Position numbers and translations under genes: made by a program. The notes under the pieces were generated by a model that was given only the letters and a program-made list of their open reading frames with translations, made no database searches and was not told where the DNA came from. Positions 9,602 through 29,423 of a DNA stretch of 64,000 nt are shown here, one piece after another (the stretch's first letter is position 1; each line of letters starts with the position of its first letter). Where the stretch lies: positions 261,082,001-261,146,000 of the forward strand of contig NC_067399.1 of assembly GCF_016432865.1 (NCBI RefSeq), read 5' to 3'. This DNA comes from Antechinus flavipes (Eukaryota).

Positions 9602-9673
9602 GGGCTCGTCCGGGATTTGAACCCGGGACCTCTCGCACCCTAAGCGAGAATCATACCCCTAGACCAACGAGCC
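9602..9673 (-). tRNA. tRNA-Pro(AGG)
   Basis: Exact canonical 72-nt mammalian tRNA-Pro with anticodon loop CTTAGGG. Confidence 0.97.
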
Positions 9674-10509
9674 ACATAGTGACTTTCGAAGCTCCCCCTA
9701 GAAGTGCGTAAGAACAGTCCCACCACGGTTATCCCCGAAGAAATACTTGGATTTTTCAGGAATCACTATTCTGTTCTCTTTTCCCCTTCGGCTACTCTTC
9801 CATTCACTTTACGCTCACTTCCCCAAGTGTCCCTCATGGTCCACTATACATTCACTATCACTCTCTCTGGAAAAAAACACAAATACATATTTCAATCTCC
9901 TGCTCCACTGACAAAGGGACCCAGATGGACACTTTACATCCTTTCTCTTCAACATACTTGCCCTGGAAACATGCTTAGCCAATTCTGGTCTCTCGAATTG
10001 CAACGAGGGGACAAGAGCAACAACTAGCAGCACCCACTCTTAGCTCCACAAGGACAGTCAAGCTTACAGGGTTCTTCCCAATTATTTCAACCTCAACCTC
10101 ACTCACTACCAAGAATATTAGATAATTCTTAAGACCTTTCAAACTCTCCTTTAGCACAAACTGTGAAGAAAACGGGATGAATCCAGAGTCAAATGATACC
10201 TCGACCATGTCAATGTTCAAAGGACCATTATTTTTGATAACGGACCAGACTAACACTTTTCGACCTATTTCTCATTTTCTTCCTGCCTAAACCTCCATCG
10301 TTCTTTGGGACCTGGCTATCCTCTTGGGATGATTTCAGTGTGTTACTTTTAGATCAGTATATGGTTTTCTATATCTCGAGTAGCTAAGGGCTCATCCTGG
10401 CCACTTCAGGAGACAACAAGGGGAAAGGGCTCCAGAGTCAGACAGATGTAGTCCGGAATTTGACCAATGGGATTCCTGTCTACACTTGTCCACTTTAATC
10501 CAGATTATA

Positions 10510-10620
10510 GATCATAGAGCTAAGTCAAAAGCTGGCAAGGATTTCAAGGGCCATCGAGTTCAACTCAGCTTTTCTTTGTACAGATGAGAAAACGGAGGCT
10601 TGGGTAGTTAAGTAACCCGC
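10510..10620 (-). mobile_element. MIR3-like fragment (left arm)
   Basis: MIR core/tail; colinear with the reverse complement of 27425-27540. Confidence 0.6.
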
Positions 10621-10859
10621 CTAAAGCATCTTACTTATTTCTTCATCCCACACGCTAACAAGCCAACTAGTTTTCAACTCCCGAATCAAGTTCTGTTTAT
10701 TTCTCTGGCCCTGTCAGTTTCTTCTTTGCGCTCAACACAAAGTTCGAAATAACCTGAGTTTTTCCAAAGGTAAAACAGTCCATGTTAATTTTGCAGCTTC
10801 AGTATCGTATTGGGTACTTTCTTTTAAGAACAAGAATAATTACTAGCAATTTACATAAC

Positions 10860-11060
10860 TTTTAAAAATTTGTAAAGTACATTAGAAATATTATATTGTT
10901 AGATTCTCACTACAACCCAGGGAGGTATTTGCTTTTATGATTTCTATTTTACAAACAAGGAAACTGAAGCAGAGGTTAGATAAGTAGAATATCCCAGCTA
11001 GCATGTATCTGAAATTGAACTAGAATTTAGGTCTTCCCGATTTCCTCGTTCATTACTTTA
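10860..11060 (-). mobile_element. MIR (left arm)
   Basis: 'ttctcactacaaccc...ttttacaaacaaggaaactgaagcagagg...gaactagaatttaggtcttcc'. Confidence 0.6.
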
Positions 11061-11349
11061 TTTGAGCACAATTAAGCTTTTTTTCAGCCCACTTCTGATT
11101 GTAGTTTGACAGAGTGGAACCCACACCAAATACAATTATGAAGCCCTACTCTTTGTATTTTCCCGAGATTCACGGGGCCATGGATTCCCCTTGAGATTAG
11201 GGAAGGCAATGACACACCACTCCCCATTCCAAGTTCATAGACACGCACTATAGAACCAGCATAGCCTGAAACAACAGGTTGAGTTTTAACAAGAACACAG
11301 AAAAGTTGAATGTTCCTGGAAAGCTGCCTTGGGGAAAGGGTCACCTGTG

Positions 11350-11422
11350 GGCTCCATAGCTCAGGGGTTAGAGCACTGGTCTTGTAAACCAGGGGTCGCG
11401 AGTTCAAATCTCGCTGGGGCCT
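11350..11422 (+). tRNA. tRNA-Thr(TGT)
   Basis: Canonical 73-nt GGCTCCATAGCTCAGGGG...CTTGTAAACC...GGGGCCT, with a T4 terminator about 12 nt downstream. Confidence 0.97.
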
Positions 11423-11989
11423 TCTACTCAGAAGTTTTCTCTTCTATTGACAGAGCTTCATTCCCGGGATTCTTGAAATCAACCTCGAGCTTTTCCCAGT
11501 ATAATTACACTGTTTTGGGGGTAAAACCCTGTTTTTTTCATAGCTGAAATAGAGTAGTGCTGGTAGTATCTGTATACTCTGCCCTTGTTGAAAACCATAT
11601 CTGGAGCCTTGTCTTCGCTTTCGATTCTATTCGATAAACATTTATCAAGTACCTTGTCAATCCTACTTTCTCAATCCTCATTCTCCTTGATCTTTCTGAA
11701 ATTCTGAAGTCTTAATATTTTATTCTCTCTTAGGTTTTCCGAACACTACTCTGCTGATTTTCCTCCCATTTTACTACTCCTTTATCTACTTTGGTTGAAT
11801 GGCCAACTGCTGGGTTTGGCTACCTCTAGGCTCTGCCCAATTCAATACCTCTTCCACTCAGCCACTTGGGTGATTATTCCTAAAGGTAAATTCAGATCCC
11901 GTCAACACGCCGGTCCCTCCCACCCACCCCAAATAAATTGCAGTGGCTTCGTATTGCTTCCAAGGTCAAACGCAGAGCCCTCTTGATGA

Positions 11990-26995: not shown

Positions 26996-27200
26996 TAGAG
27001 CATTGGAGTACTATTGAAAGTTGGGAAGACCTGAGTTTCAATTCAGCAAACATTAACTAGTTGAGCAAGTGACTTTAACCTGTTTACCTTAATCTCCTCC
27101 TTTGCAAACAAGGGTTAATAAAAACATCTCCTAGAATGTGAAGATTTAATGATATATTTTAATGTTTTGCAAACCTTAAAAGTGCTATATAAATGCTAAC
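26996..27200 (+). mobile_element. MIR (right arm)
   Basis: 'gaagacctgagtttcaattcag...gagcaagtgactttaacc...gcaaaccttaaaagtgctatataaatgcta'. Confidence 0.65.
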
Positions 27201-27419
27201 AACTTTTTAAAAGGGAATACTGGATATATTGACTAGACAATTGTTACTTCCTTATTACAAAAGTAAGCGTGGATTATGTTGACTTTAGACAATTCCAGGT
27301 TACCTTGGTCTCTCTGATGGACAAGGAGATCCTGACAGATCTAGAGAAATATACAGAACTTGCTTTAGGGAGATGAAAAGCAGTTCAAGTGTGCAGCACG
27401 GTGTATGAAGGGATGAAGT

Positions 27420-27540
27420 ATCTTGGGCAGGTCATTTAACCAATCTAGACCTCTGTTTTCTCATATGTAAAAAGAGAGGAAAGACTGAACTAGATGGAGT
27501 TTGAGATCTCTGTCAGTTCTGTATATAGATCAATGATCCT
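27420..27540 (+). mobile_element. MIR3-like fragment (right arm)
   Basis: Mirror counterpart of 10510-10620. Confidence 0.6.
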
Positions 27541-27965
27541 AAAACCAGCGTGTTCAAGTATAGACAAATAAAAGATAGGAGTCCCGTGGCTCAGCCAGAA
27601 AGACTCAGAATCCCTCTAGTTCTGGCTCCCCTAACCGTTAGGGTTAATTCCAAATTGATCCACCCTCCTACCCTTGATCTAGAAAACAGGACATTGGTTT
27701 AAGATAACATTAGGTATCAGAAAGTGACTGAAAGTTTAAGAAGAATGGGGAAAGCAGTGAAGGATGAGAAGCCACAGATTGTTTCACTGATTGAAAAAAC
27801 AATATTGAAAGGAAGATATCGCTTAACTTTGGATCTGTCTGATTTCTGTTACTCTCTGGATTAAAATGTAGTGAGAATTATATATTAAACGTTGGGGATG
27901 AGGAACAACCACCCGACCTGGGAGACTTCGGTGAAGTCCCCCACGGCTATTCTGAAATTGCCCTG

Positions 27966-28880
27966 CCATAAAGCTATAGTTTTCCAACTTCAGCTGCAGT
28001 GGTAGCTAAGTTTGGGAAGAAAAAAAGAAATCCCAGGTTACTCTTAAAAAAAAAAAAAGACAATGCTTTCCTAGTGTGTTGTGTTTGTTCTGTTTTCTTG
28101 CTTTTGGGTGGTGCTGTTCTTCAGTTGTACAGAATGTTTCAGTCATAGTGTGCAGCTTCAAATGGTGGTTTTCTTATACAAAACTGAGCTGATCTTTTAC
28201 AAGAGCTGAATTTTTACTTTCTCTTATATACCGATCATCACCTTGCAAATACTGTATATTTGGTCAGAAAGACCGGATTGTTGTTGCAAAAAAATGACTA
28301 GCAAATTATTAGCTATGGATGCAACAATATGAAGAATTGATCACTTAACTAATATTCTGGCTCCCATGGCTCTTAATCAGATGTTGACATTTGGCTCTCC
28401 AATGATTGGCTGTGAGTTCATTTCTGGATGGAATTTAGTGTCCATGTGAATAATGTACTTCTTACTCTGAAAGGTTTACTTAGAAAACTCCATCTCTGAC
28501 TTTGAAAACTTCTCCAAAGTAGATGAAACAGAACTGAAGCAATAGAATTTACAGAAAGATAATAAGTCCAAAACCCAGGAGGGATCGCATTTTATACATA
28601 AAAAAGATCCCCAAAAGTATGAATTTGAGAATGAATAAGAGGCTGTTTGCGTTTGCCAGATACCAGAGCCTCTCTGTGCTTTCCGTGAGGGTTAGATCTC
28701 CTACTACAACCTTCCATACTATAAATAGAACCTACCAATCAATGCTTCTGGCTGGCATGACACTTCACTATTGACAATACCTACACTCAGGTCTAAATGC
28801 CTCCATACTCAGCCAGGTTGGTACTTTGGAATGAACTATTGAGGTACTTTTATAGAGACAATGTGTTGGCTACGAGCACT
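27966..28880 (+). pseudogene. SLC40A1: Processed pseudogene of ferroportin (5'UTR with IRE, then codons ~97-372; frameshifts and stops)
   Basis: 28348-28446 translates [33 protein letters not shown], 27/33 identical to human FPN as recalled. Further colinear blocks are VVQNVSVI, MVVFLYKTEL, SKLLAMDATI*RIDHL, DETELKQ*NLQKD, EPLCAFREG*ISYYNLP, LAGM and YTQ. No introns are present. Confidence 0.92.
27986..28012 (+). promoter_or_regulatory. Iron-responsive element (ferroportin-type), DNA copy
   Basis: AACTT-C-AGCTG-CAGTGG-TAGCT-AAGTT gives a 5-bp lower stem, C bulge, 5-bp upper stem (one G.U) and a CAGUGN loop. Flanks match the SLC40A1 5'UTR. Confidence 0.85.
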
Positions 28881-29351
28881 TTGTTGTTGTTGTTAATGTT
28901 AATCTTTTCCTTCTTTCCTTTTCATTTTTCCTAAAGAGGCACTATATGATTTACTTTACTGTAAAAAAAAATAATTTCTATATATTTTTCCTTATATTAA
29001 ATAATTTCTATATATATTATGTTTCTATATTTTTTTTAAAAAAATAAACCTTGGTTTATTGGTAATAAGCAGAGATTGAAATAGAGATGATTGGAAAGAA
29101 GTATGTAAATTTGGCAATTCCAGAGTTTAGAGTGAGTGCAGGTCGGATTTATTATCTCCCGTGATCCAGGGACAAGCATTGTTCAGTGCGCGAACATTGG
29201 TGAACAGGGATAAAAAAGGTCCCTTTGTCTGTGGTGCAAGAGATTGGAATGCACATTTGTTCTCTTTAAAATTAACAATAATTTTAAAAGTAAAAAATAG
29301 TTATTTGTTAAAAAAAAATACTTAAGGAGGAAATAAGGTACTTATTCCTAT

Positions 29352-29423
29352 GGCTCGTTGGTCTAGGGGTATGATTCTCGCTTTGGGTGCGAGAGGTCCC
29401 GGGTTCAAATCCCGGACGAGCCC
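29352..29423 (+). tRNA. tRNA-Pro(TGG)
   Basis: Canonical 72 nt with a T4 terminator ~6 nt downstream. Confidence 0.97.

What the first reader, a model, noticed from the sequence alone, without database searches (positions are those of the whole stretch)
9602..29423. A ~20-kb ancient palindrome of tRNA genes with graded arm identity
Seen: gene order and strand are mirror-symmetric: <Pro(9602), Thr>(11350), Tyr>, Tyr>, [<Pro 17442], <Tyr, <Tyr, (Asp>), <Thr(26347), Pro>(29352). Non-coding flanks also align in inverted orientation. The Pro 5' flank 9880-10115 matches 29055-29260 (35/43 identical at ggtccctttgt...atttgt). The Thr 5' flank 11255-11325 matches 26445-26520 (agaacacagaaaagt...ttcctggaa). 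Two MIR fragments sit at mirror positions (10510/27420 and 10860/26996), and 13371-13437 matches 21294-21362. The outer arms look ~65-80% identical by eye and the inner 1.5 kb ~99%. Inference: the cluster arose by an inverted duplication postdating the MIR insertions. The tRNA bodies stayed identical (the outer Pro pair differs only at the anticodon wobble base) while the spacers decayed, and the core was homogenised or re-duplicated recently.
Basis: partly seen in the sequence, partly recalled or inferred. Interest (0 to 1): 0.75.

Follow-up and report, generated by a model that had tools for sequence, protein, structure and literature searches.

The report
Layered mirror-image tRNA gene cluster
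This mammalian tRNA gene cluster has a real mirror-image layout, made of a very old inverted duplication of a Pro–Thr gene pair and a nearly identical 1.5-kb inverted repeat carrying four Tyr genes, but it is a patchwork of several duplications rather than one clean 20-kb palindrome.

Summary
Partly confirmed. The mirror gene order is real: <Pro, Thr>, Tyr>, Tyr>, <Pro, <Tyr, <Tyr, Asp>, <Thr, Pro>. Inverted homology outside the tRNA bodies is well above a reversed-sequence control.

- **How much is homologous.** Only about 3.3 kb per arm. One part is the divergent Pro–Thr module, 9591-11443 against 26327-29434, at 55-63% identity (K2P 0.55-0.74). The others are a 70-nt block at 86% and the Tyr core, 13758-15263 against 19594-21077, at 99.4%.
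- **What shows no homology.** 1.9 kb of the left arm, 5 kb of the right arm and the 4.3-kb centre.
  - The central Pro gene is a third old copy of the Pro module, direct to the left copy.
  - A fifth Tyr unit lies at 39.3-42.1 kb.
  - A 105-nt block at 97% identity has the wrong orientation for a palindrome.
  - A ferroportin retrocopy explains the extra length in the right arm.
- **The core.** It is richer in GC and CpG than its surroundings and its old paralog, and its nine substitutions are clustered. Both fit arm-to-arm gene conversion.

This is an ordinary kind of structure (segmental duplication plus conversion) in an unusually legible form. The scan also noted the core separately as s1-184927.

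The parts
9602..9673 (-). tRNA-Pro(AGG), left outer gene
   Evidence: T-run terminator downstream.
9674..11349 (.). Left Pro–Thr intergenic region. It is an old inverted paralog of 26420-29351, and its first ~850 nt are a direct paralog of 17514-18374.
   Evidence: BLAST 145, 141 and 198 bits against a control ceiling of ~41 bits. nhmmer E 9e-35, 9e-11, 3e-42. K2P 0.55-0.74.
11350..11422 (+). tRNA-Thr(TGT), left
   Evidence: Identical to 26347-26419.
13121..13225 (+). Block B, left copy. It matches 21175-21274 in direct orientation at 97%.
   Evidence: The orientation contradicts a simple palindrome.
13368..13437 (+). Block A, left copy. Inverted match to 21294-21364, 86% identical, K2P 0.16.
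13758..15263 (+). Left arm of the near-identical inverted repeat. It carries Tyr-GTA genes at 14193-14283 and 15041-15132, and a TA/TACA microsatellite at about 14560-14700.
   Evidence: GC 48% and CpG o/e 0.59.
15264..19593 (.). 4330-nt spacer with no internal symmetry. The left half holds 1.2 kb of interspersed repeats. 18568-19094 resembles 39288-39690.
17442..18374 (-). Central tRNA-Pro(TGG), 17442-17513, with ~860 nt of 5' flank. This is the third old copy of the Pro module.
19594..21077 (-). Right arm of the near-identical inverted repeat, with Tyr-GTA genes at 19725-19816 and 20552-20642
21175..21364 (.). Right copies of block B (21175-21274, direct) and block A (21294-21364, inverted)
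25196..25267 (+). tRNA-Asp(GTC), with no partner in the left arm
26347..26419 (-). tRNA-Thr(TGT), right
26420..29351 (.). Right Thr–Pro intergenic region, collinear with the left one apart from the retrocopy insert
27896..29044 (+). Degraded ferroportin processed retrocopy inserted in the right arm only
   Evidence: Pfam FPN1 at 28333-28446, E 3e-7. Rfam IRE_II at 27984-28014, 29.2 bits against a gathering score of 30. A-run and a 10-nt target-site duplication at 27886-27895 / 29045-29054.
29352..29423 (+). tRNA-Pro(TGG), right outer gene
39288..42107 (-). Fifth Tyr unit (D). Tyr-GTA with intron at 41552-41643, miscalled Leu-TAG by ARAGORN, with flanks that are old paralogs of the arms.
8645..8714 (+). 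Degenerate tRNA-Pro-like relic, tail-to-tail with the left Pro gene

Best explanation
This is a Pol III tRNA gene cluster built in layers.

1. **Old duplications.** Modules were copied in both orientations at about the age of the old MIR-like repeats in the window. They left two mirror-image divergent Pro–Thr modules about 15 kb apart, a third Pro module between them, and an extra Tyr unit 20 kb away. The nested mirror order is most simply explained by one inverted duplication (or a tandem duplication followed by inversion) of a Pro–Thr–Tyr–Tyr segment. A retrocopy, transposon insertions and deletions later broke it up.
2. **Conserved genes.** Purifying selection kept the tRNA exons identical while the flanks drifted to near saturation.
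3. **Homogenised core.** The Tyr1–Tyr2 segment stayed, or was repeatedly re-made, nearly identical by intrachromosomal arm-to-arm gene conversion. The conversion domain now ends sharply at 13758/21077 and 15263/19594.

Shown: the homology tiers, their boundaries and the insertions. Inferred: a single origin, and conversion as the homogenising process.
For: - **Collinear inverted chain.** Six blocks run in mirror order. Their scores are 3-5 times the reversed-sequence ceiling.
- **Unique sequence between the repeats.** Homologous unique sequence lies between the mirrored old repeats at identical spacing.
- **Right-arm excess explained.** The extra length in the right arm is a retrocopy flanked by a target-site duplication, plus transposons.
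- **Intermediate tier.** Block A (K2P 0.16) sits in mirror position next to the core (K2P 0.006). At least one homogenisation therefore postdates the inverted repeat.
- **Clustered substitutions.** All nine core substitutions lie within 697 of 1506 nt (P = 0.013).
- **GC enrichment.**
  - The arms have 48% GC, against 37.6% in the spacer, 39-44% in the flanks and 30-43% in paralog D. CpG o/e is 0.59 in the arms against 0.24 for the window.
  - Strong/weak base differences against D are asymmetric, 138:84 (P = 4e-4), and 117:76 without CpG sites (P = 0.004). The old L/R and L/C comparisons are symmetric.
  - GC-biased conversion is documented for X-chromosome palindromes (PMC8981503).
- **Intact genes.** All 11 genes score above the Rfam threshold and have T-run terminators.
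Against: - No homology is detectable for 1.9 kb (left) and 5 kb (right) between the Thr genes and block A, or in the spacer. Continuity of one large duplication is therefore inferred, not shown.
- The old homology stops at the tRNA 3' ends. The duplicated unit may have been only the Pro–Thr pair.
- Three Pro modules are about equally diverged (0.63-0.74).
- Block B has the wrong orientation and position.
- Next to the core's outer edge lie 217-320 nt with no homology. A plain conversion-tract end inside older homology would not look like this.
- GC and CpG richness could reflect hypomethylated active tRNA chromatin rather than biased conversion.
- No other species could be examined.
Confidence: 0.5

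Rival explanations
1. There were two or more unrelated events. An ancient inverted copy was made of the Pro–Thr module alone. Much later, a separate inverted duplication of the 1.5-kb Tyr1–Tyr2 segment arose across the central Pro gene, perhaps through a template-switching replication error. The nested mirror order would then be a coincidence of placement.
For: - The old homology is bounded by the tRNA 3' ends, and the arms have sharp edges flanked by non-homologous sequence.
- Block B looks like a template-switch scar.
- Modules have clearly been copied independently elsewhere: the central Pro, unit D and the Pro relic at 8.6 kb.
- Fold-back and template-switch routes to inverted duplications are documented (PMC3907307, PMC10622511).
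Against: - Block A at K2P 0.16, in mirror position, needs yet another event.
- The clustered substitutions and the GC enrichment relative to paralog D are not expected of a single young copy.
- Nesting and orientation would both have to match by chance.
Confidence: 0.35
2. The near-identical core is an assembly artefact, such as a falsely inverted duplicate or a haplotig.
For: - Near-identical inverted repeats can arise from chimeric long reads (PMC6218980).
- No reads could be laid here.
Against: - The arms differ by 9 substitutions and 3 indels.
- They are separated by 4.3 kb of unique sequence that contains a gene.
- Both outer flanks are unique and carry older homology in mirror position.
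- The spacer is held by runs from 7 studies and several organisms.
Confidence: 0.04
3. The outer 'arms' are not paralogous. The similarity is only tRNA bodies plus independently inserted MIR-type repeats.
For: For the repeat fragment 10886-11055, the mirror partner scores no better than unrelated copies of the family (11.6 against 18-20 bits).
Against: - Unique blocks match only each other: 10658-10792 / 27260-27392, 11127-11333 / 26435-26642 and 9873-10116 / 29055-29266, with E about 1e-10.
- They lie in collinear order with equal spacing.
- The reversed-sequence control tops out at about 41 bits, against 141-198 bits observed.
Confidence: 0.02

Closest known systems
Mammalian sex-chromosome palindromes maintained by arm-to-arm gene conversion (PMC8327919, PMC8600007, PMC8981503)
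   Same: Inverted arms more than 99% identical around a unique spacer, sharp arm boundaries, and GC enrichment of the arms.
   Different: The arms here are 1.5 kb, against more than 8-10 kb up to megabases. The cargo is Pol III tRNA genes, not testis-expressed gene families. The chromosome type is unknown. Conversion is not demonstrated across species.
Local-duplication tRNA gene clusters and concerted or birth-death evolution of tRNA genes (PMC2888827, PMC4981973, PMC13169703)
   Same: [quoted passage not shown] Paralogous tRNA bodies are identical while the flanks diverge. The tRNA genes sit at the ends of the rearranged segments.
   Different: Those surveys report mostly parallel pairs and do not describe nested mirror symmetry or an internal near-identical inverted repeat.
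Inverted segmental duplications formed by fold-back or template switching (PMC3907307, PMC10622511)
   Same: An inverted duplicate with a spacer, and a small misoriented block (B) at one junction.
   Different: Those are recent pathogenic or experimental events. Here the junctions are old and no breakpoint microhomology was analysed.
Eutherian Pro/Thr/Tyr/Leu tRNA cluster on human 14q11.2 (from my own memory, not tested)
   Same: As I recall it, the same isoacceptor set, divergent Thr/Pro pairs about 1.8 kb apart, and neighbouring olfactory-receptor genes. An intact OR gene lies at 55068-56033 here.
   Orthology is therefore unverified.

Membership tests
DNA palindrome (inverted repeat with spacer) | Two arms in inverted orientation with high identity | tested here: met
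   13758-15263 / 19594-21077, 99.4% at 1474 aligned sites
DNA palindrome (inverted repeat with spacer) | Unique, non-symmetric spacer between the arms | tested here: met
   4330 nt with no inverted self-homology
Palindrome maintained by arm-to-arm gene conversion | Arms more alike within a species than orthologous arms are between species | not testable with these tools
Related organisms do exist.
Palindrome maintained by arm-to-arm gene conversion | Patchy divergence, or older homology beyond the converted domain | tested here: met
   Substitutions are clustered, P = 0.013. Block A at K2P 0.16 lies outside a core at 0.006.
Palindrome maintained by arm-to-arm gene conversion | GC enrichment of the arms (GC-biased conversion) | tested here: inconclusive
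   Arms 48% GC against 37-44% around them. Strong/weak asymmetry against paralog D is 138:84. Active-tRNA chromatin could also cause this, and there is no outgroup to polarise the changes.
Single ancient ~20-kb inverted duplication | Collinear inverted homology along the whole arms | tested here: not met
   Homology covers about 57% of the left arm and about 34% of the right. There is none in 11444-13367 / 21365-26326.
Single ancient ~20-kb inverted duplication | Mirror order and orientation of all shared blocks | tested here: inconclusive
   Six blocks and four gene pairs are mirrored. Block B is direct and misplaced, Asp is unpaired, and a third Pro module sits in the centre.
Functional nuclear tRNA genes | Covariance-model score above threshold, intact anticodon, Pol III terminator | tested here: met
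   11 genes at 54-71 bits against a gathering score of 29, each with a T-run within about 20 nt downstream. Expression was not tested.

The most novel reading that the evidence does not exclude
The Tyr-gene inverted repeat is the surviving core of a Mesozoic-age tRNA palindrome. GC-biased arm-to-arm gene conversion has kept it going continuously while its conversion domain shrank inward. That shrinkage left a dated series of abandoned boundaries at K2P 0.006, 0.03, 0.16 and at least 0.55. It would be a small palindrome outside the known sex-chromosome class, preserved over more than 100 million years because it carries dosage-relevant tRNA genes.
Probability: 0.2. Interest if true: 0.6.

Novelty: new member of a known kind. 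Interest (0 to 1): 0.35.

Why it matters
The history of tRNA genes is normally unreadable, because the gene bodies are kept identical. In this locus the flanks still record several layers of duplication, a datable retrocopy insertion and a candidate gene-conversion domain, all within 20 kb. A recent mouse-strain study calls concerted evolution of tRNA genes in mammals poorly known (PMC13169703). If related species show both Tyr arms evolving in concert, this would be a clean small-scale case of palindrome-type conversion acting on Pol III genes. Otherwise it is an ordinary product of local segmental duplication.

Tried and rejected
- **Read laying.** I sent 13600-19599 with four runs from four organisms. 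Only local computations on the window touched them.
- **Residual homology.** I looked in the mid-arm gaps and between the spacer halves with word-6 BLAST and nhmmer. Nothing exceeded the reversed controls.
- **Homology of unit D beyond the arm edges.** None found.
- **Homology downstream of the three Pro genes.** None found.
- **Rfam scan of the block A/B region.** No hits, so block A is not explained by a known RNA.
- **'Right arm is the parental copy'.** I first inferred this from collinearity of the right spacer end with unit D, then rejected it. Recombination between inverted arms flips the spacer, so which arm adjoins which spacer end is not informative. Part of that similarity may also be a shared old repeat.
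- **Literature.** Searches found no description of a tRNA-gene palindrome of this type.
- **MIR identity.** I could not check it, because no repeat library was available.
- **Human 14q11.2.** The N run at 58205-58429 was left untouched.
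Full report
**Genes.** ARAGORN and Rfam together give eleven tRNA genes in the window.

| Gene | Coordinates | Strand |
|---|---|---|
| Pro-AGG | 9602-9673 | − |
| Thr-TGT | 11350-11422 | + |
| Tyr-GTA | 14193-14283 | + |
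| Tyr-GTA | 15041-15132 | + |
| Pro-TGG | 17442-17513 | − |
| Tyr-GTA | 19725-19816 | − |
| Tyr-GTA | 20552-20642 | − |
| Asp-GTC | 25196-25267 | + |
| Thr-TGT | 26347-26419 | − |
| Pro-TGG | 29352-29423 | + |
| Tyr-GTA | 41552-41643 | − |

- ARAGORN calls the last gene Leu-TAG. Its sequence is plainly an intron-containing Tyr-GTA.
- The two Thr genes are identical.
- The outer Pro genes differ only at the wobble base.
- The central and right Pro genes are identical.
- Every gene is followed by a T-run within about 20 nt.

**Is the anti-diagonal real?** I ran a sensitive self-BLAST of the window (word 7, +1/−1 scoring). The inverted matches, in mirror order, are listed below.

| Left | Right | Identity | Score |
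|---|---|---|---|
| 9591-9674 | 29351-29434 | 94% | 108 bits |
| 9872-10115 | 29056-29267 | 59.6% | 46.8 bits |
| 10461-11108 | 26941-27593 | 62.9% | 145 bits |
| 11129-11443 | 26327-26640 | 67.9% | 141 bits |
| 13368-13437 | 21294-21364 | 84.5% | 69.7 bits |
| 13758-15263 | 19594-21077 | 96.7% with gaps | 2013 bits |

- Searching the whole window against its reversed, uncomplemented self gives nothing above about 41 bits outside a homopolymer.
- nhmmer supports every block independently, including the weak Pro-flank block at E 9e-11. It also supports the Thr 5' flank with the tRNA removed, at E 4e-10.
There is inverted homology outside the tRNA bodies, the repeat cores and the 1.5-kb arms.

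**Limits of that homology.**
- No match above the controls exists between 11444-13367 and 21365-26326, or between the two halves of the 4330-nt spacer.
- Demonstrable arm homology is about 3.3 kb per side. That is roughly 57% of the left arm and 34% of the right.
- Outside the tRNA bodies the outer blocks are 55-63% identical, with K2P 0.55-0.74.
- Identity comes in steps, not as a gradient. The core has K2P 0.006, from 9 substitutions in 1474 sites plus 3 indel events. Block B has 0.03, block A 0.16, and the outer module 0.55 or more.

**The outer module.**
- The old homology runs from about 11 nt past the Pro 3' end to about 21 nt past the Thr 3' end. It is exactly the divergent Pro–Thr gene pair with its shared upstream region.
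- Nothing downstream of any Pro gene is shared.
- Two fragments of an old interspersed-repeat family lie at mirror positions and in mirror orientation. The family has at least eight copies in the window.
- Between those fragments lies unique sequence that matches only its mirror partner, at identical spacing.
- For one fragment the mirror partner scores no better than unrelated family members. The duplication is thus about as old as the repeats themselves.
- I could not verify that the family is MIR.

**Why the right intergenic region is longer.**
- It is 2.9 kb against 1.7 kb on the left, and an insertion at 27896-29044 accounts for the difference.
- The insert has an Rfam IRE_II match at 27984-28014, at 29.2 bits against a gathering score of 30.
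- It has a Pfam ferroportin match at 28333-28446, E 3e-7.
- It ends in an A-run, and a 10-nt target-site duplication flanks it.
- It is a decayed ferroportin processed retrocopy that landed after the duplication.

- *Third Pro module.* The central Pro gene and about 860 nt of its 5' flank (17442-18374) are a third old copy of the Pro module. It lies in direct orientation to the left copy, at 198 bits and nhmmer E 3e-42. It also bridges the left and right copies, with 17932-18374 matching 27517-27897 at E 3.5e-14.
- *Equal divergence.* In a three-way alignment the pairwise K2P values are 0.63, 0.69 and 0.74, which are not distinguishable.
- *Orientation caveat.* Recombination between the inverted Tyr arms would flip the spacer. 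The present orientation of the central copy therefore says little about its origin.
- *Fifth Tyr unit.* The unit at 39288-42107 is an old paralog of the arms, with K2P 0.63-0.77.
- *Pro relic.* A degenerate Pro-like relic lies at 8645-8714.
- *Block B.* 13121-13225 matches 21175-21274 at 97%, but in direct orientation. On the right it lies inside block A, and on the left outside it. No simple palindrome model predicts this, and I leave it unexplained. A template switch or a patch repair is possible.
- *Asp.* The Asp gene has no partner.

**The core.**
- The arm edges are sharp. On the outer side, 217-320 nt with no homology separate the arms from block A.
- All nine substitutions lie in 13943-14640. 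None falls in the remaining ~800 nt (span test P = 0.013).
- With tRNA genes and the microsatellite excluded, the arms have 48% GC and CpG o/e 0.59. The spacer has 37.6% GC, the immediate flanks 39-44%, the window 37% with CpG o/e 0.24, and the homologous parts of unit D 30-43%.
- At aligned sites the arms hold G/C where D holds A/T 138 times, against 84 the other way (P = 4e-4). Without CpG sites the counts are 117:76 (P = 0.004). The old L/R and L/C comparisons are symmetric.
- These features fit recurrent GC-biased arm-to-arm conversion, as described for X-chromosome palindromes (PMC8981503, PMC8327919).
- Alignments at about 55% identity are noisy, and open, unmethylated chromatin around active tRNA genes could also raise GC.
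- An assembly artefact is unlikely. The arms differ at 12 places, the spacer and both flanks are unique, and the spacer is held by runs from seven studies.

**Interpretation.** I favour a layered history with three parts:
- old duplications of tRNA modules in both orientations, most simply including one inverted duplication of a Pro–Thr–Tyr–Tyr segment;
- purifying selection on the tRNA exons;
- conversion confined to the Tyr core.

The main rival is that the Pro–Thr mirror pair and the Tyr inverted repeat are separate events that nest by chance. It remains quite possible, because the middle of each arm carries no signal.

**What could not be done.**
From then on I kept those letters away from every search tool.
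- No human sequence was compared, so the proposed orthology with 14q11.2 rests only on my memory of that cluster and on a neighbouring intact olfactory-receptor gene.
- The literature treats clustered, locally duplicated tRNA genes and their concerted evolution as known (PMC2888827, PMC4981973, PMC13169703). I found no description of a nested tRNA palindrome.

**Verdict.** The structure is real and legible, but it is of a known kind. The single 20-kb palindrome is unproven.

Noticed in passing
window 27896-29044 (+): Decayed ferroportin (SLC40A1-type) processed retrocopy. It has an IRE_II-like hairpin at 27984-28014, a Pfam FPN1 match at 28333-28446, a terminal A-run and a 10-nt target-site duplication. 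It is absent from the left and central copies of the Pro flank.
   Followed up: yes
window 41552-41643 (-): ARAGORN labels this gene tRNA-Leu(TAG). The sequence is an intron-containing tRNA-Tyr(GTA) whose flanks are old paralogs of the Tyr arms.
   Followed up: yes
window 55068-56033 (-): Intact 322-aa olfactory-receptor ORF (Pfam 7tm_4, E 2e-48).
   Followed up: partly
window 8645-8714 (+): Degenerate tRNA-Pro-like relic, 79-81% identical to the Pro genes and tail-to-tail with the left Pro gene. There is a weak hint of upstream-flank homology, 8352-8466 against 9658-9777 (E 5e-4).
   Followed up: partly
window 13121-13225 and 21175-21274: A 105-nt block, 97% identical and in direct orientation, sits beside a structure that is otherwise inverted. 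It lies on opposite sides of block A in the two arms. Its origin is unexplained.
   Followed up: partly
window 16020-17269, 23054-23357, 24007-24491, 30214-30717, 43752-44461, 46857-47625: Copies of one or two interspersed-repeat families. They account for much of the left spacer half and part of the right arm's extra length.
   Followed up: no
window 14560-14700 and 20158-20265: A TA/TACA microsatellite inside the arms accounts for most of the indel difference between them.
   Followed up: partly
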